This document shows positions 7,201 to 61,424 of a DNA stretch of 64,000 nt, in pieces. A program made the position numbers and the translations under genes. The DNA lies in IMG/VR virus record IMGVR_UViG_3300034358_000008, positions 62,001-126,000 of that record; one strand, written 5' to 3'. The notes beneath the pieces are model-generated. The model searched no databases. It saw only the letters and a program-made list of their open reading frames with translations, and had not been told where the DNA came from. Position 1 is the stretch's first letter, and every line of letters starts with the position of its first letter.

Positions 7201-8129
7201 CTCATTCTGTTGAACCGATCGACGAAATCAACGTACGTATCTACATGGTTGATCATACCGTCGATGTTATCTCGGTACATGGTAAGCAGGTTAAGGAATG
7301 GGCTGATATCAATCAACTCAATCAAATCTTCTCGCTTTCCCGACCAACGATGGAACGTGATATTCTAGAACGTACCTTCGCAATTCTTCCACGTATTTCG
7401 AACAAGGTTGATTGATATGTCCATGCAAGACGAAAGCATTATCTCCCACAAACAGGTCCTGGAAACTTTCAAACGTCGCAAGCAAGGCGAATGTCGACGC
7501 TTGTTAGAAACTGCCTTTGAAGAAGGCACTCGCCAGATGATGAAATACGTGAGTGCCTTGGCCTTCAACATCACGGTGAAATTCCCTTATGTACTCCCTG
7601 AGTATGTGAAGGAAGAACTCGTGAAAGATCTGAAGACTGGCGGCTGGGAGAACTACACTTTCGAAGAGTGCGGTAAGATCCTAACTGTTCGTCTGAATTC
7701 GGAGGAGGCAAGTAGTGTCGATCACGGCTGATATGGCAGAACTGATCCCGAAGCTGAGGATCTCTATCGCTAACCTTTCATGGAGTCCAGTGGTAACTGG
7801 CGGTGAACGTAAAGAGTGGCGGATTGGAATGCCTCGTCTTATGGACTGTTCGGAGATGTTCATGATTGTCGCACACCTAGGTCTTGCACCCGGCAGGTTT
7901 GCTTTTAAACCTACTGAAAAAGGTGAGTCTCATAACCTACACATTTACTCGGAACCAGCTAATGGCAAAGAAACTATCCAAGGGGAAGCGTAAGCACCTT
8001 ATTTCCTTGGTAAAGGAAAATATTCGTGCTGAGCGGGTTTTAAGGAATGCCATGATTGATGCTCGCCGCATCGTGCATGAGAACTTCCAGTTACGTCAGA
8101 ATCGCGCTTACATGTCTATCTACTGTTAA
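4230..8129 (+). other. Cluster of tightly packed small early hypothetical ORFs (4230-4436, 4521-4742, 4739-4993, 4986-5207, 5212-5403, 5403-5780, 5780-6031, 6048-6248, 6248-6511, 6523-6921, 6921-7415, 7408-7731, ~7715-7993, 7962-8129)
   Basis: Abutting or overlapping start/stop codons on one strand, ending at a terminator. Confidence 0.65.
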
Positions 8130-23780: not shown

Positions 23781-23818
23781 ATCTTGTGTATCCAATAACT
23801 TTATCGAGGTCTGTAGCT

Positions 23819-24634
23819 ATGAGTTGTTGCAACCCTAGAGGAGTCCCAGATTCAGACATTCCGTTTGAACATCTAGGATGTCCTTGTGACACTTGGTCTC
23901 ACCTGAAAGATATGTTCGTCTATTTAAAAGATGAACGTGCTGGTGGAGTACCATGCAAACCTGAACAATTCAAAGTTCAGTGGACCGGTATCGATGCAAT
24001 GACTTATATGTTCGTTGTGACCGATAACATTACTGGCGAGATAATCGAATACAGCGTGACTAAGGAATTCACCAAGGAATCTCCTGAGCAAGCGTTTGAG
24101 CGCGATTGGCGCTTCAGAGAACTCGTGTATAACCGTGGCGTTAATCGTGCCATGGAGGACCTCCTAGAGGCCATGGAAGAAACGAATACGACTACATTGT
24201 ACAAGCTGTCCCGTGTACCAATGAAGTCACATGTAATTCACAAACCAATACAAGAAGATCTGGGGGTTATCGTATTCCAAACCGATTACCTACCAACATT
24301 CCGTCATGCTGAACCGATGACGAAAGATCAATGGAATGATTTCTATAGCGACATGCCTATCCAACTCCCCGATATCGTTTCGAAAGTGGCCTATGGTACG
24401 GATGTACTGTTGAAGCGCTTCCGTAAGATCGGGGTTAAGTTCCTTCGCATCGAACACGAAGAACTAGAAGATCTGAAACGGTTCACGATTGTAGGGGTAG
24501 CCTACCGTGACCACTCCACTGATACTGAGGTACGCATCCGCTATCAGGAGATGGATTTGGATAACCCAATCCTTCGCGCATACCACACGTACTTTACTAC
24601 GAAAGGACCACAGAATGGCTTTTTCAATTGCTGA
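23819..24634 (+). CDS. Hypothetical protein with Cys-rich N-terminus
   Basis: GAGGT RBS before MSCCNP. Confidence 0.65.
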   Translation: MSCCNPRGVPDSDIPFEHLGCPCDTWSHLKDMFVYLKDERAGGVPCKPEQFKVQWTGIDAMTYMFVVTDNITGEIIEYSVTKEFTKESPEQAFERDWRFRELVYNRGVNRAMEDLLEAMEETNTTTLYKLSRVPMKSHVIHKPIQEDLGVIVFQTDYLPTFRHAEPMTKDQWNDFYSDMPIQLPDIVSKVAYGTDVLLKRFRKIGVKFLRIEHEELEDLKRFTIVGVAYRDHSTDTEVRIRYQEMDLDNPILRAYHTYFTTKGPQNGFFNC

Positions 24635-24974
24635 CAAATTCGAGTATGACCTAGCTGCTGTAGCTACTGCTAAAATGCTTCCCTTGACTGTAATGAAGCG
24701 TTTGGTTATGAAGCTATTTAACATGGCTCCGTTTGCTACGATCCCAGACAAGATCTTCTTTGTTGAAGAATCTAAAGCATTTACTCCAGTCGTCAACGAC
24801 AAAGGTGAAACCCTTGATACAGTACGTACACAACGTTTGCTGTTGAATGGGGAAGACTCCGTTATTATCGGTTTGCGTCCAGGTGAAGGTACAGATGCCG
24901 CTTCGGTGACGACCTATATCTTCAAAGCTCAACCCGGTGTGTATGACTTGAGTGTGTGGCTCCCCGCAGCGTAA
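24615..24974 (+). CDS. Hypothetical protein
   Basis: AAGGA RBS before MAFSIA. Confidence 0.6.
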   Translation: MAFSIADKFEYDLAAVATAKMLPLTVMKRLVMKLFNMAPFATIPDKIFFVEESKAFTPVVNDKGETLDTVRTQRLLLNGEDSVIIGLRPGEGTDAASVTTYIFKAQPGVYDLSVWLPAA

Positions 24975-25386: not shown

Positions 25387-25650
25387 ATGGTCGAAAAGAT
25401 CAGACTCTACATGGGTGTGCGTAGTGGCGTTATCTGGTACAGCGATAGTGAGCAACGTAAAAACGGTGGGTCACGGGGACTAGATAAAGTCTACGGATGG
25501 CGTGGACTTGAACACGCAAATCGTGAAACTGCATCAGACGACTACTACGTTAACGCTAGTAGACGAGAACGATTTTACGAGGGAGTTGATCAAAATCAAG
25601 CTCGACGAAATGGCCCCCATCGCGATAGACAGGAATGTGAATTCTCATGA
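25387..25650 (+). CDS. Hypothetical protein, RxRxE paralog family
   Basis: YMGVR...ARRNGPHRDRQE. Confidence 0.6.
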   Translation: MVEKIRLYMGVRSGVIWYSDSEQRKNGGSRGLDKVYGWRGLEHANRETASDDYYVNASRRERFYEGVDQNQARRNGPHRDRQECEFS

Positions 25651-25850
25651 TTAGTAAAGGTAAATTCCGACATCTGCGTGAGTTGTATGGTTACAATGAT
25701 TTCGTGATGTATAAAGATCTTAAGACTGGTTTCTCCACAGGTTATCATCGTGGGAAGGTCTATCACAACATGTATCCGATTAGCGGTGGTGGTCCAGCAT
25801 TCGACTGCACCGGTGTAAACGTAACTCTTAATTATCGAGTAGAGGTGTAA
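25647..25850 (+). CDS. Hypothetical protein, SKGK-leader family
   Basis: MISKGKFRHL. Confidence 0.6.
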   Translation: MISKGKFRHLRELYGYNDFVMYKDLKTGFSTGYHRGKVYHNMYPISGGGPAFDCTGVNVTLNYRVEV

Positions 25851-26266: not shown

Positions 26267-26615
26267 CAAAGGGAATAGACGGTATAAGAACCGTTGCTAT
26301 GAGCAACCGCGTGTTGCCTCTAACGGCATGGGTTGTGAGTGGACACATAACTACTTCCGTGATGAATGGACCTCGCGATTAGATCCACCCGATTCCTCTC
26401 GACGTACTGAAGCTGATGGCCATGAGGAAACTCCTGAGGCTCACCGGACCGGAGTGGATTTCTGGGGTAGGGCAGGTCTACGTGATGGTCAGGGTGCCTG
26501 TCTATTCATAGGTGCGTTTGAGGTTAGCGCTATACGCGATAACGATTGGCACCGTAAACGTTCTGAAGATTGCATTAACCCACCTGACGATGATGAGGAT
26601 TGGATAGATGATTAG
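26217..26615 (+). CDS. Hypothetical protein, RxRxE paralog family (start uncertain)
   Basis: AIRDNDWHRKRSE motif. Confidence 0.5.
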   Translation: MSGASMASSVTSVRGLNKGNRRYKNRCYEQPRVASNGMGCEWTHNYFRDEWTSRLDPPDSSRRTEADGHEETPEAHRTGVDFWGRAGLRDGQGACLFIGAFEVSAIRDNDWHRKRSEDCINPPDDDEDWIDD

Positions 26616-26877
26616 CAAAGGTAAGCGTAGGTTTCTGGTTCGACTTAACCTCCTGACGGTGTTGTGCGCTCAGCACCGGAAAGATGGTCAGATCGATTTA
26701 TTTGGTTGGGCTAAGTTGGCAGCTTTGAAACCTCGGTTGCGCTATCGGACTACTACCCCTAGAAAACCTTGGGTAATGCCAACGCTGGCTACACCAGAAA
26801 CGCATGCAAAACTCAGAGAGATCCAGAACAACATAATGGCGAGGTACCGATCTAATGTCGAAAATATCCAAGGGTAA
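26608..26877 (+). CDS. Hypothetical protein, SKGK-leader family
   Basis: MISKGKRRFL. Confidence 0.6.
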   Translation: MISKGKRRFLVRLNLLTVLCAQHRKDGQIDLFGWAKLAALKPRLRYRTTTPRKPWVMPTLATPETHAKLREIQNNIMARYRSNVENIQG

Positions 26878-27187
26878 GCGACGCTATCTATTACGGATGT
26901 ATCGTAGTTGGGTAGAGCTTCGAAGGCTCCGTGAGATATTCGGTCACCCTATTCTCAATCATGAATTTTTGAGTATCATGAATAAACGCTGGGTCGATTT
27001 AATGAGTCAGTGGCGCATGAATAGTCAAAAGCTCCTTGATGGTCTGGGTGCACCGGAGTCGTATATGGTGGCTACTCTACCAATGCGTCGTCAACGTGTT
27101 ATCGAAATAAACAAGAGCACTGGGTTACCACGCGGTGGATTACCCATGGTTACGTTGTTCACCGAGAAAGGACCAGTCAATGACTAA
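26855..27187 (+). CDS. Hypothetical protein, SKGK-leader family
   Basis: MSKISKGKRRYL; GAGGT RBS. Confidence 0.6.
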   Translation: MSKISKGKRRYLLRMYRSWVELRRLREIFGHPILNHEFLSIMNKRWVDLMSQWRMNSQKLLDGLGAPESYMVATLPMRRQRVIEINKSTGLPRGGLPMVTLFTEKGPVND

Positions 27188-27392
27188 TCTTCCAGCAGTT
27201 ATCCCACCATCATTTCACATACCCCTGGTATCGCCATATGGATCGACTGCACAAATGGTCCGTAATACCATGGCTAGGGTGTATGCTGGTATTATGTTAA
27301 TGGGTGTGACTCCAGGGGTAGCTCCAGAAGACCTTCCAAAGCATCGTAAGCTCATTGAGGACGTTCTGCATGTCACGAGTAAGCAAGGGTAA
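27180..27392 (+). CDS. Hypothetical protein
   Basis: AAGGA RBS. Confidence 0.55.
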   Translation: MTNLPAVIPPSFHIPLVSPYGSTAQMVRNTMARVYAGIMLMGVTPGVAPEDLPKHRKLIEDVLHVTSKQG

Positions 27393-27960
27393 GATCAAGC
27401 ACCTATGGGCATTGTACGGCGTTTGGGATATTGTTAGTCACCATCGGTTGATGGATGAATATACTCAATTCATTGCCACGGCAAAGCGATGGGAAGCGCG
27501 GTTGCATGACCCTAAGGTGGTTTCTCGGATATCGCGGTTCAGGGATGCAGTGGATCAACGTCTGGTTGAACCAATGGTTCAACAGATCGCTACCAAAGGT
27601 TACTACGATGGTTGCCGTAAGTTGGATAGTGAGTTTGATTTAGAAGTGTTCATTGATATCAAACGGATGGAAAACCTAACGCACCTGACCTATTCCCGTG
27701 GGAAGCATCACCATCATTCCCTGAAAGATAAAGTTATTACTTACGACATAAAGCCCGATATCCTAGAGGCGATGTCAAAACCAGTCATACGTAAGTCAAC
27801 TATGTCTGGTGCGATTTATGCAGAAGGTAGCCTTGACCGTATAGCGCATCTCGACATTGCCGACACCTACCCTAAGACAATTACCGTGACCGATGAAGAA
27901 TGGCTTGAACGGGAGTTGTGGGTTATTCACGGGAGATGTGATGAGACGTCCTCAACGTAA
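27370..27960 (+). CDS. SKGK-leader mosaic protein with DnaB-like and PolB motif A-like fragments
   Basis: MSRVSKGKIKHL; KGYYDGCRKLDSEFDLEVFI...RGKH; LDIADTYP. Confidence 0.6.
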   Translation: MSRVSKGKIKHLWALYGVWDIVSHHRLMDEYTQFIATAKRWEARLHDPKVVSRISRFRDAVDQRLVEPMVQQIATKGYYDGCRKLDSEFDLEVFIDIKRMENLTHLTYSRGKHHHHSLKDKVITYDIKPDILEAMSKPVIRKSTMSGAIYAEGSLDRIAHLDIADTYPKTITVTDEEWLERELWVIHGRCDETSST

Positions 27961-28186
27961 AGACCTCTACTATGGTTTCAGGAGTCAGGACTATGCGATG
28001 AGACCTGAATATTTTTACGGTCGTCAGTTAAGGACCAGTAAACCTGAACGTGATTGTCAATACGATCTTGAACGCAATGACGTGTGTTACGATGAGGGAG
28101 ATGGACCTAGGCATTGGATGTCTTTAACCGTTGCTCGTGACAACCAGTGTCAGCGTGGTAGGCATGAAAACTTCTATGCTCCATAA
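27941..28186 (+). CDS. Hypothetical protein, RxRxE paralog family
   Basis: YYGFR...ARDNQCQRGRHE; GGGAG RBS. Confidence 0.6.
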   Translation: MRRPQRKDLYYGFRSQDYAMRPEYFYGRQLRTSKPERDCQYDLERNDVCYDEGDGPRHWMSLTVARDNQCQRGRHENFYAP

Positions 28187-28390
28187 AATGCGCGCCCGGC
28201 GCATAAGTAATTCTAGGTAAAGCAATTTACATCGATAAATTAGTTTATCTAAAGAGCTTTTGTAATTTGCTTTTTAGATAAATTACTTAGATATAAATAG
28301 TATATTATGAGAGGGGGCCTTGGGGGCCCTCGAATAATATTCCTTATTCTTAGTATAGCAAGAGCTATACGCATTATGCCCTATGGGAGT
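28187..28390. repeat. AT-rich intergenic region with nested inverted repeats
   Basis: TAAGTAATT/AATTACTTA, AGCAATTTACA/TGTAATTTGCT (imperfect), GATAAA/TTTATC, GTATAGC/GCTATAC and others. Confidence 0.7.
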
Positions 28391-28394
28391 TAAC

Positions 28395-30338
28395 ATGCAA
28401 CATTACTATCGCGTTAAGCGTGCCAATGGACTTGTGTCTACCTTACACACTTACTGTGACTGGGACAAAGTCATAGCGGAGTACGGAGATGATCTAATCG
28501 GGGAAATGAATGGTCGTGGAGTATTCCAACGCATCAATGTTCCATCTGCTATCCGTGGTCAAATCAATGAGCTATTACTTTCCATGAATGAAAATAACAT
28601 TCTTGAGGTTAATCAAAAGATCACTGAACTACATGACAGTGTGTTGAAGCGTGAAGAACCATTACCGGATTATCGATTCCATCAGTACTCCTTAATGCAG
28701 CTACAACAGGATTACTATAACGAGGTAATCATTCCATCCCTATATCCAGAGGTAAAATGCAAAGTGTGTGAATCCCCTATGTTGGAAAGTGTATTCCCTG
28801 ATCTGTTCTTCAAGTTAGACGCTATGAAAAATAAAGTACAAGCTGATCCTAAGGGTAATCCAGTACGTACCGATATACAACTGATCCTACCTGACTTCTT
28901 CAAGAATGTAGGTGGTCAAACAGTCGTTGATACCGATGCAGTCGATGAACGTAATCGTCGTATAGCAATGAGACGTACTGCTGATGCTGTATTCAGTGGT
29001 CATAAACCGGGAACTACTCCTGATCCAGTGATTGATAAACGAGTGGATGAATTCAGTGCTATGTTTGAAGCACAGTCTGTAACTACCCCTGAAGAAGGTG
29101 GTATTACTGTCGTCCTACCGTATAGCGGGATCGAACTAAATTTGAAAGCACCGACTCAAGAAGATATGTACGCTTCAACAACTACAACTTTTGAATTCCT
29201 TGATCGGATTGGCATTAACCTTTTCGGAGAAGAATGGAAGAACATGAGAACCCCTAGACCCGTGGAACTGTCTAAGACAATCGAACCAGTGGTTCAGAAG
29301 ACCGCTTACGAACTGTGGCTGGAAGATGGTAACGTGGGTGAGATCGAAGATTACATTAGCGAATGTGGTCGGTATCGACGGTCTCCTTCGCTTTACCCTG
29401 AAGACTTCAAAGAAACCGTTAAGTATTTCCATAAGCAAGGTGGCCACAGTGTGGTCATCCGTAAAGATAACTACGGTGGTTACGCGCTGAGTGTTTACCC
29501 AGCTAAGACTAAAGACACATGCAAACGGCCAGAAATTAAAGGGGTAATCCTTAAAGGTTCTAAACCCCCAATCCAAATTGATGATGGTGAAGTACGTTCC
29601 CATATCAAGAATTTCGTAGAAGCTCAATACGAACCACATCTTGCCGCACAGGTACTCGAGAAATTGGATACGATTGCTGAAGTAGAGAAGAAACCACTCG
29701 TGGCCATCCTGCCACCCCATCTGAGCCGTATCATCGATTCATTGAAGTTCGGTAAAGGTCACATCGAAGCTGCTGTTGCTATGCTCAAAGACATTCAGAG
29801 TAATAATCCTACAGTAGCAGAGTCCGGTGAATATGACCAAGTTAAGGTTGATACCGAATTCACTACTGGTTATGAAGCCGTCTTTGAAGAAATAGCTCGC
29901 GAAGAGCAGGTAAAAGTAGATGCCGCTTCAACTGTACCTTCCTTGGCCCAATACGACGCTGTCCTTGAGCAGCTTACATGGGAAGCCGAACGTCGCATTC
30001 TGATCGGTACTAGCTCCTACGGTATTCAAGAACAGTTCCTTCGTTTCCTGAAACGTTGTGATGAAGAACAATTGAATACAGCTACACCATCGGCTTACGA
30101 TCGTGAACACTTCGACAAGATCTATAAAACTAACCGTGACAGTATCGGTTACATGTTGGCTACGGTGTTGACACCACATCTGGAGAACGCTGCTCATCGT
30201 CGAGAGTACATGGTCGATGGTACCGAGAACAATGTGCTCCGCGTATCACGTATTTGCCATGGTCGTAAAGGTGCTTCGTATCGTCCATTGGTAACCATTC
30301 GGTTTGTCAAAGGTTTCTTCAATATCGAAATGCATTAA
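28395..30338 (+). CDS. Large mosaic protein with chimallin-like, tail-fibre-like and DNA-polymerase-like segments
   Basis: About 650 aa; GGGAG RBS; motifs detailed in findings. Confidence 0.65.
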   Translation: MQHYYRVKRANGLVSTLHTYCDWDKVIAEYGDDLIGEMNGRGVFQRINVPSAIRGQINELLLSMNENNILEVNQKITELHDSVLKREEPLPDYRFHQYSLMQLQQDYYNEVIIPSLYPEVKCKVCESPMLESVFPDLFFKLDAMKNKVQADPKGNPVRTDIQLILPDFFKNVGGQTVVDTDAVDERNRRIAMRRTADAVFSGHKPGTTPDPVIDKRVDEFSAMFEAQSVTTPEEGGITVVLPYSGIELNLKAPTQEDMYASTTTTFEFLDRIGINLFGEEWKNMRTPRPVELSKTIEPVVQKTAYELWLEDGNVGEIEDYISECGRYRRSPSLYPEDFKETVKYFHKQGGHSVVIRKDNYGGYALSVYPAKTKDTCKRPEIKGVILKGSKPPIQIDDGEVRSHIKNFVEAQYEPHLAAQVLEKLDTIAEVEKKPLVAILPPHLSRIIDSLKFGKGHIEAAVAMLKDIQSNNPTVAESGEYDQVKVDTEFTTGYEAVFEEIAREEQVKVDAASTVPSLAQYDAVLEQLTWEAERRILIGTSSYGIQEQFLRFLKRCDEEQLNTATPSAYDREHFDKIYKTNRDSIGYMLATVLTPHLENAAHRREYMVDGTENNVLRVSRICHGRKGASYRPLVTIRFVKGFFNIEMH

Positions 30339-31610: not shown

Positions 31611-32600
31611 TTGGAGCTTTACTTGATGACCCCTTACGATTTTGAAAAACCAACTGGCCCAGTAAAAACATGTTTGATCTTTGCCGGTGGTGCTGGTCTT
31701 AACGTAGCAACCCATTTGGTGGACCTGCCTAACGTCCACTGTATTGATACCTGTGACAAGAACCTGGTTGATGCACACAAGAAGACCAATGTGTTCCTGA
31801 CCAAGGGTACGCGTGGTGCCGGTAAGAACCGTAAATACATCTTGCCTCTGATCCGTCCTCAATTGCCAGACATCATGGCGACTATCCCAGATGCAGACTT
31901 CTACATTCTCTGCTATTCGTTGGGTGGTGGTTCGGGTTCGACTCTTGCTCCATTGATTACCAACCAGCTGGCTCAACGTGGTGCTTCGTTTGTAAGCTTC
32001 GTAATCGGTGCAACTGAATCTCCTGAGGTTCTGCAAAACGACACTGATACCATGAAGTCGCTTGAAGCGATTGCTATGCGTATGAAGCTGCCAGTCGTTG
32101 TGAACTACACCCCTAACGTAAATGGTCTCACTTTCGATGCCATTAACCGCGGTGTTGCAGAGAACATCCGTCGTGTGGTTTGCCTGACTAATGGTAACCA
32201 TGGTCGCTTGGACGTACATGACGTATCCAACTGGGTACGCTTCACTGATAAACATACGCAACTGATGCCGCAGGTATGTGAACTGCATATCGAGACCAGC
32301 CGTAAAGATGCTGAAGGTATCCCTGAACCCATCGCTACAGCTAGTCTGTATCTGGATGAGTCCAAGGAATTCGCTTTCGGTAACCCTGTAGCGCGCACTG
32401 TAGGTATTATGAAAGCAGATGATACCGATGTGACGGATGATCAGATGCACTTCGTGATCAACTCCGTAGGCGTCGTAGAGATCATGAAAGGTATTGCTGA
32501 TACCCGCACCGAACAAGTCCGTAAGCAAGCAATGTTCGTACAACGTAACCCGCTGCTCGATCCAGACGACAACATCGATGACGATGGCATGGTAGTCTAA
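31611..32600 (+). CDS. phuZ: Phage tubulin PhuZ
   Basis: FAGGAG loop, GAGKNR, tubulin signature SLGGGSGS, LDVHD, acidic C-terminal tail. Confidence 0.92.
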   Translation: MELYLMTPYDFEKPTGPVKTCLIFAGGAGLNVATHLVDLPNVHCIDTCDKNLVDAHKKTNVFLTKGTRGAGKNRKYILPLIRPQLPDIMATIPDADFYILCYSLGGGSGSTLAPLITNQLAQRGASFVSFVIGATESPEVLQNDTDTMKSLEAIAMRMKLPVVVNYTPNVNGLTFDAINRGVAENIRRVVCLTNGNHGRLDVHDVSNWVRFTDKHTQLMPQVCELHIETSRKDAEGIPEPIATASLYLDESKEFAFGNPVARTVGIMKADDTDVTDDQMHFVINSVGVVEIMKGIADTRTEQVRKQAMFVQRNPLLDPDDNIDDDGMVV

Positions 32601-42110: not shown

Positions 42111-44270
42111 ATGGAACAAACTCACACCGATGTAAAACCAAATCCTTTTTACCAAGACATTTCTGAGTATCACCGCGAACTTGAAATCGTTAACCCACTG
42201 ATGCGTGACACAGCGCTGTATCTTTCGAGCATGACCGGAGATGATCTGGACAAGTGCTTGGCTTTCGTACAGTCGTCTATGGCCCCCGGTGGTCAGTTCG
42301 AGCTTAATGATCCTAAGACAATGATTCTGGATAAAGGTGAGAATGGTGATCGGGAGAAGAAGGTTATCCGGTTCAGCCAGTATCTAGGTCGAGTAAAGAA
42401 ACAGAACCTATTGCTCTCACCTAGTATGACCGTCTATTTACCAGAAGAAGTAAGAGCATCTACACATGCCAAGTACATCGAAGAAGGCGTTGCTAATCGT
42501 AAAGCAGTTAAGAAAGAGCAGATGCGGTTGGAAGGTGAGGGTACAACTGAAGCACTCGAATTAGCCCAAGTTCGTAAAGGCGAACAAGAGAACTTCAAAA
42601 TCAACAATAACTCCTACTCAGGAGCTACCGTTAGTGCTGCAACGATTCTCTACTACAAGTCTACTCACTCGAGCCTGACCTCTACTTGCCGTACTGCAAC
42701 TTCTTATGCTAACGCAAACAATGAGAAGTTCATCATGGGTAACCGTCACTACTACTCCCCAGAAGTGACTAAAGCTAACATGTTGAGTCTGGTCAATAAC
42801 ACTGACTTGAAACAACTTGAAGCTTGCATGCAGAAGTTCAAGATGCACTACCCAACAGCAGACGAGATCATCGACATGATTCTCTACTCGACTGCTCACT
42901 ACTGGTCCAACCCTGACTACACTGCACAGCTGCGTAAACTTGCAGCTGGTATGTCCCCGATTGGCCGTGCAGCTATCATGTACGTCGGTGACCTCTACCA
43001 TACTTACAAATACAACCCTACTTTGGTTAAGGGTTTCTTGAATGAGTTGTCGAGTGTTGGTACACCAGATAAAATTGTATCTAAAGAACAATACAACAAA
43101 TACGATGGCGACATGCAGTTGCTGGCAAGCTTCATTAACTTTGATATGATCAAAGGTCGTAACAACGAAAAGCTCGCTGAAGAAAACCCGGAAGTGTTTG
43201 ATCTGATCTACGCTACCGGTAACAATATCTCCCTAGTGTTGAATAAGTACGTTCTATTTATCAAGGCATTGTTCCTGACTAAGAACGTTCCTCCAAGCAT
43301 CCATGCATTCCCGACAGCTTATCGTCGTGCTGCCGTAATCTCAGACACTGACTCTACTATGTTCACCATGCAATACTGGGTGGAAGAGTTCTTTGGTCGA
43401 GTTACCTTTAGTGATGAAGCCAAGCGTCTGGTATTTGCTTTGGTGTTCTTGGTGTCCGAAGTGGTCATGCACATTCTGGCATTGCAGTCGATCAACATGG
43501 GCGTTACGTCCAAGAAGCTTCGTCTGCTCGCTATGAAGAACGAATACTACTTCGCAGTACTTAGTCTGACTACCCGCTCGAAACACTACTACGCGTCTCA
43601 GGATGCGGTAGAGGGTATCATGTTTGCTAAGGCCCGTATGGAAGTGAAGGGTGTTGGTCTACGAGACTCTAAGGTTCCGCCACGTATCAACAAAGCTGCT
43701 AAGAAGATGATGGAACACGTCATCACCACGATCAAACGTGAAGAGACGTTGGATCTTCCAGCCATGCTTAAGCAGATTGGCGACATCGAACGAAACATTA
43801 TGACTTCGATCTATACCGGTAAAGCGGAATACCTGACCACCGGTAAGGTTAAGAAGATTGATGCTTATAAATCGGAAGCTAACGCTACTTACGCTAAGTA
43901 CAAGTTCTGGAAAGAAGTGTTCGAACCTAGCTTTGGTTTCTTGGAAGCGCCGCCATACTCCTTCGTTAAGATCTCCGTGACTATCGATAACCGTACTCGT
44001 TTTGAGGCATGGATCGAAACTATCGAAGATAAGCCATTGGCCATGCGATTGAAGAAGTGGGCTTTGGAGAACAACAAGAAAGGCATCACTAACTTCCACG
44101 TACCAATGTCTGTGGTTGAGAACCATGGTATTCCTGAGGTTATCACCCGCGTAGCAAACGTACGTCAAACTATCGCTAACACGATGGGTAGCTTCTATCT
44201 GATCATGGAGTCCTTAGGGATCATGCTTCAGGATAAGAAGAACACCCGTCTCATTTCGGACTTTTACTGA
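42111..44270 (+). CDS. Family B DNA polymerase subunit (phiKZ gp50-like)
   Basis: Motif B KINNNSYSG, motif C ISDTDS, KHYY...EVKGV; GGAGG RBS. Confidence 0.88.
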   Translation: MEQTHTDVKPNPFYQDISEYHRELEIVNPLMRDTALYLSSMTGDDLDKCLAFVQSSMAPGGQFELNDPKTMILDKGENGDREKKVIRFSQYLGRVKKQNLLLSPSMTVYLPEEVRASTHAKYIEEGVANRKAVKKEQMRLEGEGTTEALELAQVRKGEQENFKINNNSYSGATVSAATILYYKSTHSSLTSTCRTATSYANANNEKFIMGNRHYYSPEVTKANMLSLVNNTDLKQLEACMQKFKMHYPTADEIIDMILYSTAHYWSNPDYTAQLRKLAAGMSPIGRAAIMYVGDLYHTYKYNPTLVKGFLNELSSVGTPDKIVSKEQYNKYDGDMQLLASFINFDMIKGRNNEKLAEENPEVFDLIYATGNNISLVLNKYVLFIKALFLTKNVPPSIHAFPTAYRRAAVISDTDSTMFTMQYWVEEFFGRVTFSDEAKRLVFALVFLVSEVVMHILALQSINMGVTSKKLRLLAMKNEYYFAVLSLTTRSKHYYASQDAVEGIMFAKARMEVKGVGLRDSKVPPRINKAAKKMMEHVITTIKREETLDLPAMLKQIGDIERNIMTSIYTGKAEYLTTGKVKKIDAYKSEANATYAKYKFWKEVFEPSFGFLEAPPYSFVKISVTIDNRTRFEAWIETIEDKPLAMRLKKWALENNKKGITNFHVPMSVVENHGIPEVITRVANVRQTIANTMGSFYLIMESLGIMLQDKKNTRLISDFY

Positions 44271-51778: not shown

Positions 51779-53677
51779 ATGATTCGTGACAAAGATACCG
51801 CTGCTACTCAAACCCCAGCCGCAGCAGTTCAACCAGCTCCAGCTTATCAAGCACCACAACAATCGCAGGCGACGCAAATGGAACAACCACAAGTGCAACA
51901 AACCCAATTCGCTGGTCGTGACCTGAACTCGAACTTCGAGCGTTCCGGTAAGACCCAAGGTGGCGACGCTCGTTCGAGTGAAGCACTGCAACTCTTCAAC
52001 CGTTTGAAAGAACAAGCTGTTGCATCCCAGGATCTGAAGGACGACTTCACCATCCTGCGTTTCGACCGTGACCAGAACCAAGTCGGTTGGTCTTCGCTGA
52101 TCATCGCTAAGCAAGCTACCATCAACGGTAAGCCACTGATCGTGGTTCGTCCACTGATCATGCCTAACGCTGCGATCGAACTGCCAGCCCGTAAGGTCAC
52201 CCTGCAAAACGGCATGCATCAAGAAATCATCGAGACCGAAGTTTCGGTTGGTGACGTATTCAGCAAGAAGTATCACGGTAAGCTGGTAGCTTTCGTTCAG
52301 GCATCCCTGAGCAAGCCAAACGCTGAAGTGGTTCTGGCTGGTGCATTCCCAATCCCTGCTGATCTGGTCCTGAAGGATTCCGAACTGCAACTGCGTTCGC
52401 TGTTGATCAAATCGGTTAACGCCTGTGAAGATCACCTGCAACGTCGTAGCGGTGAGAAGCCGTTCACCATCGGCATGCTGAAAGGCAACGATGAAACTCT
52501 GGCAGCCAAGATCGATACTCGTGATCTGACTGTAACCGATACTCTGGGTAACCCGATCCGTTCGGACGTGGTTGTAGGCATGCAGCGTGTTCGCCGTCAA
52601 GGTCAACAACAAGAGAACGAGTTCTACGAGACTGACGTCAAGTTGAACCAAGTATCCATGTTCACCAACCTGGAATATCAGCAACAAGCTCAGCAGAACA
52701 CCATGTTCGGTGCTGGTCAACAAGTTGCTCAACCAACCCCACCATGCACCGCAGCAGTGGTAATCACTGACGTACGTAACGCTGATGGCATTCAGGCTAA
52801 CACTCCTGAAATGTACTGGCTGTCGCTGTCCAACGCATACCGTGCAACTCACGGTCACGCTTGGGCTCGTCCATTCCTGCCACAAACTGGTAAGGTAAAA
52901 GACCTGCGTGACATCGGTGCTCTGGGCTGGTTGTCTCAGCTGCAAAACAAGATCGACACCAAGGCTGCTTCGTTCGACGACGCACAGTTCGGCATGCTGA
53001 CTCTGAGCATGATCAAACAACAGCCAGTGTTCCAGATCGACCTCAACCGTCTGGGTGAGAACGGTCCGATCGATGGCATGCTGTTGGACGCTGCTGGTGG
53101 TGAGAACCAACAGAAAGCAGTAGCAACTGTAGTTCGTCAGGTAACCAACCTGCTGGGTGTTGACTTCGGTAAGTTCTTCGACTACACCACTCAACCGATT
53201 CTGGTTAAGACTGGTCAGACTATCGACCTGGGTCACTACCTCGATGAAGATGGTGAGAAGCGCGACCGTCGTGAACTGGATAACCTGGGTGCCCTCAACG
53301 CATCGGAAGGTAACCTGAACGAATGGTGGGCTTACTACGGTTCGCAACAGAACACCAACATCCACCCGGATCAGCGTACCAAGCAGTCGCGTAACTTCGA
53401 CCGTCAGTACCTGGGTAGCACTGTTACGTACACCGGTAAAGCCGAACGCTGCACCTTCAACCCTAAGTTCATCGAAGCACTGGACGCAGCAATCGTTGCT
53501 GTTGGTCTGAGCGTAACCATGGACAATACTTCGGTATTGAACTCCGGTCAACGCTTCACCGGTAACTCGGTGATCAACCAGTTCCAAGTTGGTGGCACTG
53601 CACAAGTACAACAGTACGGTGGTCAGCAACAAGGCTACGGTCCTCAGTACAACGCTGGTGTTGGTAGCTTCTACTAA
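51779..53677 (+). CDS. chmA: Chimallin, phage nuclear shell protein
   Basis: 632 aa; Q/P/A-rich flexible N-terminus and G/Q/Y-rich C-tail; strong codon bias; immediately upstream of the nvRNAP beta' gene as in phiKZ gp54/gp55. Confidence 0.85.
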   Translation: MIRDKDTAATQTPAAAVQPAPAYQAPQQSQATQMEQPQVQQTQFAGRDLNSNFERSGKTQGGDARSSEALQLFNRLKEQAVASQDLKDDFTILRFDRDQNQVGWSSLIIAKQATINGKPLIVVRPLIMPNAAIELPARKVTLQNGMHQEIIETEVSVGDVFSKKYHGKLVAFVQASLSKPNAEVVLAGAFPIPADLVLKDSELQLRSLLIKSVNACEDHLQRRSGEKPFTIGMLKGNDETLAAKIDTRDLTVTDTLGNPIRSDVVVGMQRVRRQGQQQENEFYETDVKLNQVSMFTNLEYQQQAQQNTMFGAGQQVAQPTPPCTAAVVITDVRNADGIQANTPEMYWLSLSNAYRATHGHAWARPFLPQTGKVKDLRDIGALGWLSQLQNKIDTKAASFDDAQFGMLTLSMIKQQPVFQIDLNRLGENGPIDGMLLDAAGGENQQKAVATVVRQVTNLLGVDFGKFFDYTTQPILVKTGQTIDLGHYLDEDGEKRDRRELDNLGALNASEGNLNEWWAYYGSQQNTNIHPDQRTKQSRNFDRQYLGSTVTYTGKAERCTFNPKFIEALDAAIVAVGLSVTMDNTSVLNSGQRFTGNSVINQFQVGGTAQVQQYGGQQQGYGPQYNAGVGSFY

Positions 53678-53871: not shown

Positions 53872-55335
53872 ATGGGTCTTCATTTGTCCATTGTCGATTT
53901 AGACGTGGTGCACGACAACTTCAAAGGCAAGATGGTTTATGCCAATGACTTTAACACCAGTACAGCAGAAGGTAAAGAAGCATTCCAACGTCACTTCTAT
54001 TCGCACTATCAAGATGCGGATGCAGTAGAGAACTCTGCTGCTTGTGACTGCGATCACATTACAGACGCACACAAACTGGGTGTGATCTGTGAAGTATGTG
54101 GTAACCCTGTAGTATCCACTAGTAACCGTCCTATCGTACCATCCATGTGGATCAGAGCACCAGAGGGAGTAGATCGTTTGATCTGTCCACAACTCTGGAT
54201 CATGCTATCGAACTACATGACGATGAAGGAATTCGATTTCCTTGAGTATCTAACGAACACCAGTTATAGTTACGATTATAATTCGATCAGTTCTAAAGAG
54301 ACTAAACGTAAGCTCGATAAAATGCTCCAACGGAACTTCCCTCGTGGTCTGAACAACTTCGTTCGGAACTTCGATGAGATCTTCCAGTTCTTGCTTGATG
54401 CTAACATCATCAACAATAACAAAACTGAGATGAACGAATTCATCCAGCAGAATAAAGGGAAGATGTTTCCACGACATATTCCTATCCCATCCAAACTCTG
54501 CTTCGTAGTGGAATCTACCACTAGCGGCAACTACATGGATGAACCTATTGGACCGGCTATCGAAGCGGTACTGACGTTCTGTTCCATTAGTAGTAGTCCG
54601 ATCCCAATTAAGCCGATCGTTGTCCAGAATCGGGTTGCAGAGTCCCTGAAGAACTATTCGTTGTATCACAAGACTCTAGCCAAATCGCGTATCGCGCAGA
54701 AGCCTGGATTGTGTCGACGACATGTACTCGGTGGTCGTTTGAACTTGACTGCTCGTGGTGTAATTACTTCGATCAGTGATCCGCATGATTATGATGAACT
54801 GCATATCCCGTGGGGCATTGCATGTCAACTGTTTAAGTATCACCTGATCAATAAGCTCAAGCGTAAGTATCGGATGCCTACGCGTAAGGCCCAAAGCTTC
54901 ATCTATGAACACGTTCTGCAATACAACCCCATCTTGGATGAGTTGTTTCAAGAGCTGATCGCAGAAGCGAAGTATAAAGGTCCATCGTGTACGTTCCACC
55001 GTAACCCGACCTTGCAACGTGGTTCGACTCAGATGTTCTTCATCACCAAGGTTAAGACTGACCTTCGTGATAACTCGATCAGTATGTCGGTTCTCTGCCT
55101 GAAGTCTCCTAACGCTGACTTTGACGGTGACCAACTGAACTTGACCTTGCTCCCAGATAACTATCTCGGCGACGCATGTGATCGTATTGCTCCACACACA
55201 TGGGTACTCAGTACAGATGATCCTCATCAGATCTCGGGTAACCTAGAGCTACAAGGCCCAGTTGTTGAAACTGTGGTGAACTATGTCCACGAAGATTATC
55301 TACCTTCACTTGAAGATTGGTTAAAAGGGGAATAA
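53872..55335 (+). CDS. Non-virion RNA polymerase beta' N-terminal subunit (phiKZ gp55-56.1-like)
   Basis: Zn-binding CDC...CEVC, RNPTL, catalytic NADFDGD. Confidence 0.9.
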   Translation: MGLHLSIVDLDVVHDNFKGKMVYANDFNTSTAEGKEAFQRHFYSHYQDADAVENSAACDCDHITDAHKLGVICEVCGNPVVSTSNRPIVPSMWIRAPEGVDRLICPQLWIMLSNYMTMKEFDFLEYLTNTSYSYDYNSISSKETKRKLDKMLQRNFPRGLNNFVRNFDEIFQFLLDANIINNNKTEMNEFIQQNKGKMFPRHIPIPSKLCFVVESTTSGNYMDEPIGPAIEAVLTFCSISSSPIPIKPIVVQNRVAESLKNYSLYHKTLAKSRIAQKPGLCRRHVLGGRLNLTARGVITSISDPHDYDELHIPWGIACQLFKYHLINKLKRKYRMPTRKAQSFIYEHVLQYNPILDELFQELIAEAKYKGPSCTFHRNPTLQRGSTQMFFITKVKTDLRDNSISMSVLCLKSPNADFDGDQLNLTLLPDNYLGDACDRIAPHTWVLSTDDPHQISGNLELQGPVVETVVNYVHEDYLPSLEDWLKGE

Positions 55336-59688: not shown

Positions 59689-60286
59689 CTATCTCTCGGG
59701 GCTGCACGTAAGTGAAATGGAGGTTCAGCGCGCATGCGCTGACATCCTAGCCAATGACGAGCGACAGACTCCCGTTGTTACAGAAGATATCTTCGAACAC
59801 CAGATTGTTCCTTTGCTGCAACGACCATGGGATGAAAAGAACCTTGCTATTTATAAGCGGTATGTAGTCGAACTGACTATGCCTCTACGAGTAGCGGGTG
59901 TACGTAACGGTCAGACGGTTACGTTGTTCACTGTTCCACCTCTACACGCTCGTGTGGATACCTCTATGAGTGGTATTCATGACATCACGGTTAACCATCT
60001 AATCGAACATGCTTCGATGTTACGTCACCGTGGTACGAACGAACCTGTAGAACGGTACGTTGCCGAATACCTACATCAGATCTCTCAACTAGTTCCTATT
60101 GAAGAGAAACTCCTTGTCCCACTTGGGGCTATCCTAGCGTTGTACGGAAAGACTTTCGTCGACGACGGAGGGTTTCCTTTATACGAGTTGGATGGCCAAC
60201 CAAAGACTACGATCAGTAGTACAGGTGAAGTAATTAACCTGTCGGGTGACCCATTCCAAAGCGACGGATTATTGGATGAAGACTGA
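59675..60286 (+). CDS. Conserved hypothetical protein (gp64-like)
   Basis: GGAG RBS; LFTVPPL motif. Confidence 0.6.
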   Translation: MGNVNYLSGLHVSEMEVQRACADILANDERQTPVVTEDIFEHQIVPLLQRPWDEKNLAIYKRYVVELTMPLRVAGVRNGQTVTLFTVPPLHARVDTSMSGIHDITVNHLIEHASMLRHRGTNEPVERYVAEYLHQISQLVPIEEKLLVPLGAILALYGKTFVDDGGFPLYELDGQPKTTISSTGEVINLSGDPFQSDGLLDED

Positions 60287-61424
60287 CCGGACTAAAATGC
60301 CTGGAGTGTTCAAGTACATTAGTTTAGGCGATGTCCATTTAGGGCATCGCTTGACTCCAGCATCTCACATCATCAAAAACCTACAACGTTTGATTACTGA
60401 TGATCTGTTGAAGACACTTGACATGATCATTATCACTGGGGATCTATTCGACCGTCAGTTGAACAATGGTGACGATGACGTAAACGCTATCAACCGTTGG
60501 ATCACCATTCTGTTGTACAAGTGCGCTGCGTATGACGTGCATCTGTATATTGTAGAAGGGACTCCAAGTCATGACCGTAAACAATCTCAATTCTTCATTG
60601 AGCAGAAAGTAAACGCCAATATTCCGGTGGAATTACACTATGCGAAAGAGCTAGAGATTCTTTACAACGACCGCTTTGACGCTCATTTCCTTTTTGTCCC
60701 TGATAAATGGCATCCTAGTACTTCCGTGACCTTGGGTCAAGTGAAAGCTAAGATGAAGGAATTGGGAATTGAGCAAGTTGACTTTGCTGTAATGCACGGG
60801 GCATTCACTTATCAACTACCTAGCATCGTAGAAGAACCTACTCATGATCAGTTCGAATACCTCTGCTTGGTTAAACACCAGATCTTGATTGGTCACGTAC
60901 ACAACATGACCGTCTACGAAGACAAGATCTATGCTGCGGGTTCATTTGATCGAATCTGTCACGCTGATGAAATCCCTAAAGGAATGTTTCACTTTGAAGT
61001 CCGTAAAGATGATACGTTCACAGCTACGTTCATTGAGAACAAAGGGGCTAAGTCTTACGTTACTTGGGAAGTCCACGGGTTAGATACCAAAGAGCTGAAC
61101 TTCCAAGTCAAAGAACGTATACAAAACCTACCAAAAGGTTCCTCTATCCGCCTAAGGTGTGATCCGGGAGACGTAGCTAACGGTGACATTGATTCATACC
61201 GTCGAGAGTATCAATCTTTCGATTGGCAGATCACTGTGGAAAAAGCTACCGCCAAGAAGAATACTGTGATGGAGTCCATGCGTAACTTCGATATGTCAGA
61301 GTTTGTCCCTATCACTAAGGATAACATTCTAGAACTGTTGTTGTACGAGTTGGAAAACCAAGGGCACTCAGAGACGACCGTGGAACGTTGCGCTATGAGA
61401 TTTAAAGAGTTAGTAAAGGGATAA
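60276..61424 (+). CDS. SbcD/Mre11-like metallophosphoesterase nuclease
   Basis: GDVH, GDLFD, GTPSHD, MHG and GHVH motifs. Confidence 0.88.
   Translation: MKTDRTKMPGVFKYISLGDVHLGHRLTPASHIIKNLQRLITDDLLKTLDMIIITGDLFDRQLNNGDDDVNAINRWITILLYKCAAYDVHLYIVEGTPSHDRKQSQFFIEQKVNANIPVELHYAKELEILYNDRFDAHFLFVPDKWHPSTSVTLGQVKAKMKELGIEQVDFAVMHGAFTYQLPSIVEEPTHDQFEYLCLVKHQILIGHVHNMTVYEDKIYAAGSFDRICHADEIPKGMFHFEVRKDDTFTATFIENKGAKSYVTWEVHGLDTKELNFQVKERIQNLPKGSSIRLRCDPGDVANGDIDSYRREYQSFDWQITVEKATAKKNTVMESMRNFDMSEFVPITKDNILELLLYELENQGHSETTVERCAMRFKELVKG

What the first reader, a model, noticed from the sequence alone, without database searches (positions are those of the whole stretch)
27370..27960. SKGK-leader protein fused to DnaB C-terminal and PolB motif A fragments
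VQQIATKGYYDGCRKLDSEFDLEVFIDIKR...LTYSRGKH (27574-27710) resembles, from recall, the motif-H4/arginine-finger end of phiKZ-type DnaB (KGYxDxCxxxDxExDLE...RGKHR). IAHLDIADTYPKTI (27841-27882) resembles PolB motif A (DxxxxYP). In phiKZ-like phages motif A is thought to lie in the other split polymerase subunit, and it is not evident in the subunit in this window.
Basis: inference. Interest (0 to 1): 0.72.

Follow-up and report, generated by a model that had tools for sequence, protein, structure and literature searches.

The report
Small protein built from enzyme fragments
A nucleus-forming jumbo phage carries a conserved 196-residue gene with a helical head and a floppy tail stitched from short copies of the most conserved parts of the phage's own DnaB helicase and SbcD-like nuclease; it probably acts by mimicking those enzymes, but its function is untested.

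Summary
The ORF at 27370-27960 is real, conserved and under purifying selection. It lies in a 324.9-kb chimallivirus assembled from a peat metagenome. Residues 67-118 are a true copy of the H4-to-arginine-finger segment of the phage's divergent DnaB (Pfam E 1.6e-14; profile-profile E 1.4e-19). An intact 509-aa DnaB sits elsewhere in the genome, so this is neither a split gene nor a pseudogene. The 'PolB motif A' string is present, and its best match in the genome is motif A of the other polymerase subunit (E about 0.01). A better explanation is that it continues a second captured piece: residues 146-170 match the strand after motif V of the phage's SbcD/Mre11-like nuclease (E 1.6e-7). The SKGK leader is part of a confidently modelled 66-residue helical domain. 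Four tandem paralogs share its first 40-45 residues. One of them, SKGK2, carries a piece of a conserved tail protein (phiKZ gp182 family). More than 40 representative homologs exist, including 201phi2-1 gp53. The most likely role is a mimicry-based modulator of replication and recombination enzymes; this is inferred, not shown. The PolB claim is probably wrong.

The parts
27357..27361 (+). Shine-Dalgarno-like GAGGA, 8 nt before the ATG
   Evidence: Read directly from the sequence.
27370..27960 (+). SKGK4 gene: 196-aa mosaic small protein, the finding itself
   Evidence: ORF. Full-length homologs at 36-51% identity. Conserved synteny. dN/dS 0.2-0.36.
27370..27567 (+). N-terminal helical domain (residues 1-66) including the SKGK leader; its first 40-45 residues are shared with the tandem paralogs
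   Evidence: AlphaFold2 with a 37-sequence alignment gives helices 6-15, 18-45 and 48-66 at pLDDT 82-95. Leader residues and W41 are invariant in the family. SKGK3 aligns over residues 1-46.
27568..27723 (+). DnaB-derived module (residues 67-118), corresponding to DnaB residues 412-462: H4 motif through the RGKH(R) loop
   Evidence: Nucleotide identity to dnaB is only 56%, so the copy is old and kept at the protein level.
27739..27759 (+). TYDIKPD block (family consensus AYD[IFL]EAD); origin unknown
   Evidence: Conserved in 14 relatives. No parent found in the genome, and the polymerase Exo I motif is not hit.
27805..27879 (+). SbcD/Mre11-derived piece (residues 146-170).
   Evidence: Block HMM against the genome's ORFs gives E 1.6e-7 and 27.5 bits, with 0 of 100 shuffles reaching it. 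hhalign of A4 against the nuclease gives E 3.4e-4 over residues 146-180. The nuclease segment is conserved in 201phi2-1, Viktualia and FLC9. For the motif-A rival.
27880..27915 (+). Conserved tail block (family consensus V.DE.N.DRL)
   Evidence: Aligned in 10 relatives.
25647..25850 (+). SKGK1 paralog (67 aa)
   Evidence: Leader match. Orthologs in L004, L005 and L006.
26608..26877 (+). SKGK2 paralog (89 aa). Residues 17-85 (26656-26862) copy residues 240-301 of a 672-aa core protein (201phi2-1 gp277 / phiKZ gp182 tail-protein family; genome 273306-275324).
   Evidence: hmmsearch E 9.6e-5. hhalign 88.8% probability, E 2.5e-6, with 0 of 100 shuffles reaching the score. Parent identified.
26855..27187 (+). 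SKGK3 paralog (110 aa), ortholog of 201phi2-1 gp52
60246..61424 (+). SbcD/Mre11-like nuclease, the parent of the second captured piece; donor segment at about 60918-61013
   Evidence: PHROG 100, E 5e-61. Weak NCBIfam Mre11/SbcD hits..
42111..44270 (+). DNA polymerase C-terminal subunit (divDNApol). It carries motif C (DTDS) and no motif A.
   Evidence: Subunit architecture as described in PMC13648687.

Best explanation
The ORF is a functional accessory gene of a clade of chimalliviruses (201phi2-1, Viktualia and many uncultured relatives).

What it encodes: a modular small protein. The head is a 66-residue helical domain that starts with the SKGK leader; its first 40-45 residues are shared with three tandem paralogs. 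The tail is largely unstructured. It carries short, anciently captured copies of the most conserved, active-site-adjacent segments of the phage's own DNA enzymes. One is 52 residues of the DnaB helicase (H4 motif through the Lys/Arg-finger loop). The other is about 25 residues of the SbcD/Mre11-like nuclease (the strand after motif V).

Most likely mechanism (inferred): molecular mimicry, in the manner of a microProtein. The copied DnaB segment would dock on the surface that normally receives it, the nucleotide-site face of a neighbouring DnaB protomer. The nuclease piece would dock on the corresponding partner surface. The protein could thereby cap, hold apart, load or poison these oligomeric enzymes. 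The shared helical head would supply a common function such as oligomerisation, localisation or hand-over.

Shown: gene reality, modular architecture, the parentage of the two pieces, conservation and purifying selection.
Inferred: binding to DnaB or SbcD, and the direction of the effect.
For: - DnaB piece: (E 1.4e-19).
- Intact DnaB elsewhere in the genome.
- SbcD piece: E 1.6e-7; 0 of 100 shuffles; E 3.4e-4.
- Same theme in paralog SKGK2, with a different parent.
- Family breadth: 182 profile hits, of which about 45 are short proteins. 19 of these carry a leader and a well-aligned module.
- Conserved synteny, directly upstream of the gp54-like gene and about 3 kb upstream of PhuZ.
- Purifying selection: dN/dS 0.27 overall and 0.12 in the DnaB module for the closest pair; 0.11-0.27 for SKGK2-4.
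- The small proteins keep the same positions that DnaB keeps. D28 is present in 19 of 19, E30 in 17 of 19, R48 in 18 of 19, and Lys and Arg of the K-x-R loop each in 15 of 19. This is what is expected if the piece still makes the parent's contacts.
- Structure model: confident helical head, and a tail with no confident fold of its own. This fits a segment that folds on a partner.
- Module tree: 18 of 19 leader-bearing modules plus the gp53-like ones sit apart from 92 DnaBs. This fits one old capture, though support is weak at 77/90.
Against: - There is no direct evidence of binding. The complex prediction with the DnaB C-terminal domain gave no verdict.
- In this particular copy the residue aligned with the presumed arginine finger is His.
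- SKGK2 carries a piece of a tail protein, so the family is not specific to the replisome. A more general role (decoy, chaperone) may fit better.
- The gene evolves faster than its neighbours: 48% identity against 93-96% for PhuZ and the gp48-like protein in L005. Much of this reflects saturated dS and mosaic recombination.
- Expression has not been observed; only a DNA run holds the sequence.
- The custom block HMMs are small, and 11 block or family HMMs were run against the genome's ORFs.
Confidence: 0.45

Rival explanations
1. Epitope decoy. The copied segments are the parts of conserved phage proteins that a host defence sensor, protease or modifying enzyme (or a competitor phage's weapon) recognises in the cytoplasm. 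The small protein would soak up that factor.
For: The pieces come from unrelated parents: helicase, nuclease and, in SKGK2, a tail protein. In each case the piece is the most conserved stretch of the parent. The genes are among the faster-evolving ones in the neighbourhood. Chimallivirus proteins are made in the cytoplasm outside the protective shell (established knowledge; PMC13648687 introduction and PMC11077065 abstract).
Against: No sensor is known for these segments. There are no PADLOC-related hits. dN/dS is well below 1, with no sign of an arms race. The conserved residues include buried or structural ones (G, Y), not only surface ones.
Confidence: 0.17
2. Evolutionary patchwork without parent-related function. 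Illegitimate recombination stitched gene scraps onto a leader domain. The protein is kept for some unrelated role, or is only weakly constrained, and the pieces are raw material only.
For: The C-terminal blocks are shuffled, lost and reordered among relatives. Most of the tail has a low-confidence structure. Several blocks have no detectable parent. Selection is somewhat relaxed, with omega 0.27 against 0.10-0.15 for several neighbours.
Against: The DnaB module is the best-conserved part of the tail (omega 0.12) and keeps the parent's key residues in 15-19 of 19 relatives. The same parent-piece design recurs in two paralogs. The gene persists at one syntenic site from this phage to 201phi2-1.
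Confidence: 0.2
3. One reading: the string IAHLDIADTYPKT is a captured copy of PolB motif A from the N-terminal polymerase subunit, so the protein also mimics the split palm of the polymerase.
For: It is the best non-self hit in the genome (E 0.0093; 1 of 200 shuffles). It is also the reciprocal best hit, and relative P0002 scores E 1.1e-4. It is the top hhalign alignment. The polymerase is split just after motif A, so a strand mimic could in principle pair with the C-terminal subunit.
Against: hhalign gives P 0.038 and 1.4% probability. The reciprocal E is 0.47. With the wider family alignment the polymerase is not hit at motif A. The residues AD..PK align collinearly with the nuclease's ADEIPKG right after the significant GS.DR..H match. 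Relatives without the 3-residue insertion keep the nuclease pattern H.(D/E)E.P.
Confidence: 0.2
4. Broken or split dnaB: a pseudogene remnant, or an exon of a helicase gene interrupted by an intron or homing endonuclease.
For: Only profile positions 265-328 of 356 are present. Related phages annotate such ORFs as 'DnaB-like replicative helicase'.
Against: A complete DnaB covering profile positions 1-355 is encoded 100 kb away. The small ORF is intact, conserved and under purifying selection in many phages. No endonuclease gene or intron-like RNA is nearby. Nucleotide identity to dnaB is 56%.
Confidence: 0.03

Closest known systems
Pseudomonas phage 201phi2-1 gp53 (with gp52) and Viktualia CDS0242 (with CDS0241)
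   Same: They sit at the same syntenic position: directly upstream of the gp54-like gene, about 3 kb upstream of PhuZ. They carry the same DnaB H4-to-finger module. gp52 and CDS0241 are SKGK-leader paralogs.
   Different: gp53 and CDS0242 lack the SKGK head and start directly with the DnaB piece. They also have different C-terminal blocks (GGRxxRRMGK, HGVDG, PPVS). No function has been published for them in the papers searched.
Chimallivirus divergent DnaB helicase (Pfam PF20307)
   Same: Residues 67-118 are homologous to DnaB residues 412-462 and keep the same conserved acidic and basic positions.
   Different: The Walker A/B, H1a and H3 motifs, the N-terminal domain and the C-terminal tail are all absent. 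The protein cannot be an ATPase or a ring helicase.
MicroProteins / small interfering proteins of eukaryotes (e.g. LITTLE ZIPPER, Id proteins; my own knowledge, not checked here)
   Same: A small protein derived from a fragment of a larger oligomeric protein. It would be expected to act by forming non-productive complexes with the parent or the parent's partners.
   Different: Here the pieces come from at least two different parents in one chain. They are mounted on a shared helical head used by several paralogs, and the host is a phage. Binding is not demonstrated.
Phage helicase loaders and inhibitors (T4 gp59, lambda P, SPP1 G39P; my own knowledge)
   Same: Small phage proteins that act on DnaB-family rings. 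Chimalliviruses have no identified loader; the lack of an identified primase or clamp is stated in PMC13648687. A language-model search gave a weak gp59-family lead (score 0.86).
   Different: There is no sequence or fold match to any of them. None of the known ones is built from a piece of the helicase itself.
Genes split by introns or homing endonucleases in jumbo phages
   Same: The fragments correspond to highly conserved motifs, which are the usual insertion sites. Some homologs of the N-terminal polymerase subunit end inside motif A.
   Different: The parent genes here are intact, and no endonuclease or intron is adjacent. The fragment is fused in frame to unrelated sequence and is conserved as such.

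Membership tests
DnaB-family replicative helicase (Pfam PF20307 divDNAB) | Complete RecA-like ATPase core with Walker A (H1), H1a, Walker B (H2) and H3 | tested here: not met
   The Pfam match covers only profile positions 265-328 of 356. hhalign aligns only residues 67-118 to DnaB 412-462.
DnaB-family replicative helicase (Pfam PF20307 divDNAB) | H4 motif and the following Lys/Arg-finger loop | tested here: met
   KGYYDGCRKL..E.DLE and RGKH are present. The Arg after K-H is His in this copy. Naming that Arg as the finger rests on my recalled alignment with Bacillus DnaB; the PDB profile alignment stopped at H3.
Family B DNA polymerase | Motif A (D..S/T-L/Y-YP) in the context of exonuclease motifs and motifs B and C | tested here: inconclusive
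   A 13-residue resemblance to the N-terminal subunit's motif A gives E 0.0093, but hhalign gives P 0.038. No other polymerase motif is present, and the Exo I idea found no hit.
SbcD/Mre11 metallophosphoesterase | Phosphoesterase motifs I-V | tested here: not met
   Only the roughly 25-residue stretch after motif V is present. There is no Pfam Metallophos hit.
SKGK-leader small-protein family (defined here) | N-terminal M-x(1-3)-S-K/R-G-K/R-x3-L-x2-L-Y leader, the helices that follow it, and location in the tandem array upstream of PhuZ | tested here: met
MicroProtein-type dominant-negative regulator | Derived from a fragment of a larger oligomeric protein | tested here: met
MicroProtein-type dominant-negative regulator | Physically binds the parent or its partner and alters its activity | not testable with these tools
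   Complex prediction returned no verdict. This needs biochemistry.
Intron- or endonuclease-split gene, or pseudogene | Parent gene interrupted or absent; mobile element adjacent | tested here: not met
   Intact DnaB. No endonuclease domain or intron RNA in 24-31 kb.
T4 gp59-type helicase loader | gp59 N- and C-terminal domain fold or sequence | tested here: not met
   No Pfam or PHROG hit. Only a weak Atlas feature score of 0.86. Fold searches gave only generic long-helix matches.

The most novel reading that the evidence does not exclude
The SKGK array would be a general 'fragment display' system. A common helical handle presents copies of the most conserved interface or active-site segments of several core phage proteins: helicase, nuclease and tail protein.

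This would allow one of two roles. In the first, the phage chaperones or licenses its own oligomeric proteins, for example holding DnaB protomers apart in the cytoplasm for import into the phage nucleus. In the second, it blinds host sensors, or poisons the equivalent machines of co-infecting relatives.

Either role would be a previously undescribed class of phage regulator, built by capturing pieces of the phage's own genes.
Probability: 0.2. Interest if true: 0.85.

Novelty: new variant of a known kind. Interest (0 to 1): 0.6.

Why it matters
- Chimalliviruses replicate inside a protein shell with an unusual replisome. No primase or sliding clamp has been identified (PMC13648687), and to my knowledge no helicase loader either.
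- A conserved small protein carrying the inter-subunit finger segment of the helicase and a piece of the SbcD-like nuclease is a concrete candidate regulator of that machinery. It can be tested in a cultivable relative (201phi2-1 gp52/gp53).
- The finding points to a way phages may make new regulators: copy a short conserved segment of one of their own enzymes onto a reusable handle.
- It flags an annotation error. ORFs of this kind are being labelled 'DnaB-like replicative helicase', as Viktualia CDS0242 is.

Tried and rejected
- Complex prediction of the protein with the DnaB C-terminal domain gave no verdict: score 0.00, partner pLDDT under 50. It counts neither for nor against binding.
- The first AlphaFold2 run, with 11 sequences, gave pLDDT 43. 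It was superseded by the 37-sequence run.
- Fold searches (pdb_via_wide, BFVD) returned only generic long-helix or coiled-coil matches at Z about 5, or E above 0.3.
- Atlas searches gave only weak leads: gp59 family at 0.86, HBB at 0.77.
- PDB sequence searches for the family and for the 651-aa neighbour found nothing. The DnaB profile aligned to solved DnaBs only up to H3.
- The idea that AYDIEAD copies the polymerase Exo I motif found no hit.
- The idea that the SKGK leader is a degenerate copy of the DnaB RGKHR loop found no hit.
- The other C-terminal blocks of relatives (GIWQRKR, GGRxxRRMGK, TPGYVEV.CG, HAIDAAL..GIDQL) and the SKGK1 and SKGK3 families have no parent in this genome at E below 0.1.
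- The downstream overlapping ORF 27941-28186 shows only non-significant resemblance to the DnaB finger loop (E 1.7-4).
- The Rfam, promoter and terminator scans of the region showed nothing above background.
- PADLOC and NCBIfam gave no hits for the SKGK proteins.
- Leaderless short DnaB-like proteins were checked as possible split-helicase exons. Their contigs are under 600 bp and uninformative.
- No RNA run holds the sequence, only a peat metagenome DNA run.
- The 201phi2-1 transcriptome paper has no held supplement and does not mention gp52-54.
- One search was a mistyped query.

Full report
**Context**

The window is bases 62001-126000 of a 324,912-bp virus record. The record holds the hallmark genes of nucleus-forming jumbo phages:
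- chimallin at 51779-53677;
- a PhuZ tubulin at 31611-32600;
- a non-virion RNA polymerase subunit at 53872-55335;
- a divergent family B polymerase subunit at 42111-44270.

The only public run that holds the sequence is a peat metagenome. The nearest cultured relatives at this locus are Pseudomonas phages Viktualia and 201phi2-1.

**The observation**

The ORF runs from an ATG at 27370, preceded by GAGGA, to the stop at 27958-27960. It encodes 196 residues starting MSRVSKGK.

**The DnaB piece is real**
- Pfam PF20307 (divergent DnaB-like ATPase) matches residues 69-129 to profile positions 265-328 of 356, E 1.6e-14.
- PHROG 3213 agrees.
- The genome also encodes a complete 509-aa DnaB about 100 kb away that covers the whole profile.
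- The two share 51% identity over 49 residues, E 4e-13.
- A profile of 11 homologs of the small protein against a profile of 60 chimallivirus DnaBs gives 99.2% probability and E 1.4e-19. The match is confined to residues 67-118, which correspond to DnaB 412-462.
- Nucleotide identity over this stretch is 56%, with no long exact run. The copy is therefore old and maintained at the protein level.

This is not a split or decayed helicase gene.

**It is a gene, and a family**
- Word-based and exhaustive profile searches found full-length homologs of 150-290 aa at 36-51% identity.
- At 50% clustering there are about 45 short representatives among 182 profile hits; the remainder are full-length DnaBs.
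- In three metagenomic contigs, in Viktualia and in 201phi2-1, the gene occupies the same place. It lies directly upstream of a large gp54-like ORF and about 3 kb upstream of PhuZ.
- dN/dS is 0.20-0.36 between orthologs. It is 0.12 in the DnaB module for the closest pair.
- Against L005 the gene is 48% identical, while PhuZ and a gp48-like virion protein are 93-96% identical. However, dS is saturated for most neighbours, and the gp48-like segment looks recently exchanged (dS 0.16). The gene is therefore only moderately less constrained than its neighbours: omega 0.27 against 0.10-0.15.

**Architecture**

With a 37-sequence alignment, AlphaFold2 models residues 1-66 as three helices at pLDDT 82-95. 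The rest has no confident fold. A shallower alignment had failed. Fold searches return only generic long-helix matches.

The strict SKGK leader pattern occurs in exactly four ORFs of the genome, all in tandem with starts at 25647, 26608, 26855 and 27370. Each has its own orthologs in related contigs. SKGK3 aligns with SKGK4 over the first 40-45 residues. The head is thus a shared domain, and the tails differ.

**The DnaB module keeps the parent's key positions**

Counts below are for the 19 leader-bearing relatives with a well-aligned module:
- the acidic H4 positions are kept in 17-19 of 19;
- the Arg before the loop is kept in 18 of 19;
- the Lys and the Arg of the K-x-R loop are each kept in 15 of 19.

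The window's copy is the only one with His at the last Arg. Calling that Arg the arginine finger rests on my recalled alignment with Bacillus DnaB, because the PDB profile alignment ended at motif H3.

A tree of the 59-column module places 18 of 19 leader-bearing copies, plus the leaderless gp53-like ones, apart from 92 DnaBs. Support is weak (77/90). The window's copy is not sister to its own DnaB. This fits one old capture, with later loss of the head in the 201phi2-1 lineage.

**The 'PolB motif A' string**

The window's polymerase subunit has motif C and no motif A. Motif A (ADLDIVSTYPNV) lies in the N-terminal subunit at genome 146879-149017 on the minus strand. This is as in phiKZ, where the split falls just after motif A (PMC13648687).

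Evidence for a link to motif A:
- A 10-sequence HMM of the block finds this motif as the best non-self hit among 1598 six-frame ORFs (E 0.0093). One of 200 shuffled sets reaches that score.
- The reverse search ranks the small ORF first.

Evidence against:
- That reverse hit has E 0.47.
- hhalign gives P 0.038.
- With the wider family alignment the polymerase is not hit at motif A.

**A second parent**

A 12-sequence HMM of the preceding block (G.IY..GS.DR[IL]) hits the phage's SbcD/Mre11-like nuclease (window 60246-61424; PHROG 100). The hit falls immediately after that enzyme's motif V (GHVH). It scores E 1.6e-7 and 27.5 bits, and no shuffle out of 100 reaches it.

The tool's hhalign gives E 3.4e-4 over residues 146-180. 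The nuclease segment is conserved in 201phi2-1, Viktualia and FLC9.

Relatives that lack the TYP string keep the nuclease pattern GS.D[RK]L.H.(D/E)E.P. In the window's subfamily the same pattern reads GS.DRI.H, then a 3-residue insertion (LDI), then AD.YPK. This aligns with the nuclease's ADEIPKG.

The motif-A-like string is therefore most simply the continuation of the nuclease piece. I put PolB parentage at about 0.2.

**The theme recurs in a paralog**

Residues 17-85 of the SKGK2 family match residues 240-301 of a 672-aa core protein:
- hmmsearch E 9.6e-5;
- hhalign 88.8% probability, E 2.5e-6;
- 0 of 100 shuffles reach the score.

That protein is present in 289 phage records. It is the ortholog of 201phi2-1 gp277 and phiKZ gp182, which PMC11512511 describes as a conserved tail protein family. 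The matched stretch is one of its most conserved motifs.

No parent was found for SKGK1, SKGK3 or several other tail blocks.

**Interpretation**

What is shown:
- a conserved, selected gene family;
- a shared helical head;
- tails that carry old copies of short, highly conserved segments of the phage's own core proteins.

What is inferred is how the protein works. The conserved finger-loop and acidic residues, and the lack of an independent fold, fit a segment that docks where the parent's segment docks. For DnaB that is the neighbouring protomer's nucleotide site. The protein could therefore cap, load, hold apart or poison the ring, as microProteins do with their parents.

Two other readings remain open:
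- The tail-protein piece in SKGK2 leaves room for a more general role, either as a decoy for a factor that recognises conserved phage segments or as a chaperone or licensing adaptor.
- The shuffled, partly parentless blocks leave room for a patchwork with an unrelated function.

The complex prediction gave no verdict. No expression data exist for this phage.

**Comparison and novelty**

The closest relatives are 201phi2-1 gp53 and gp52, and Viktualia CDS0242 and CDS0241. I found no functional study of them. Automatic annotation calls CDS0242 a DnaB-like helicase, which it cannot be.

Functionally, the nearest known kind is the microProtein or dominant-negative fragment. The new elements are the multi-parent mosaic on a reusable head, and its occurrence in a phage. 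I rate it a new variant of a known kind, with an interest score of 0.6 that depends on experimental follow-up.

Noticed in passing
window 28296-28371 (and 28188-28204): The spacer between SKGK4 and the gp54-like ORF holds a sequence conserved in all six related phages, including 201phi2-1. It has an AT-rich TATATTAT box inside a long hairpin with a GC-rich tip (28296-28348). A second hairpin (28353-28371) has two compensatory pairs. This was the only DNA-level match to Viktualia in 6 kb (84.8%). It is probably a terminator, promoter or 5'UTR element. A further GC hairpin at 28188-28204 directly follows the gene in L004.
   Followed up: partly
window 26608-26877: The SKGK2 paralog carries a roughly 60-residue copy of a conserved motif of the phiKZ gp182 / 201phi2-1 gp277 tail-protein family (parent at genome 273306-275324).
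   Followed up: yes
window 7965-8129: A possible fifth SKGK-like ORF (MAKKLSKGKRKHLISL..., about 54 aa) lies far from the array. The leader HMM scores it at E 0.0015.
   Followed up: partly
proteins P0083 (PhiPA3), P0090, P0105, P0117: Several homologs of the N-terminal polymerase subunit end at HVADLD, inside motif A. This suggests that in those phages the gene is interrupted there, perhaps by an intron or endonuclease.
   Followed up: no
window 27941-28186: This phage has an extra 230 nt between the SKGK4 stop and the conserved hairpin, compared with L004. An 81-aa ORF overlapping the stop spans the extra stretch. Its end (CQRGRHENFYAP) weakly recalls the DnaB finger loop, but the match is not significant (E 1.7-4).
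   Followed up: partly
window 28383-30338: The large neighbour (201phi2-1 gp54 homolog) varies from 395 to 651 aa among relatives. It has no Pfam, PHROG, PDB, NCBIfam or PADLOC match. Comparison with homologs suggests its true start is the ATG at 28395 (MQHYYRV) after GGGAG.
   Followed up: partly
window 23786-24971 versus L005: The gp48-like virion gene and its neighbour have dS 0.16-0.23 against L005, while flanking genes have dS above 1. This suggests a recently exchanged segment, that is, mosaic recombination between related phages.
   Followed up: partly
L014 (Viktualia 155894-157060): The match to the SbcD-like nuclease in Viktualia is reported with one in-frame TAG inside the open frame.
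   Followed up: no
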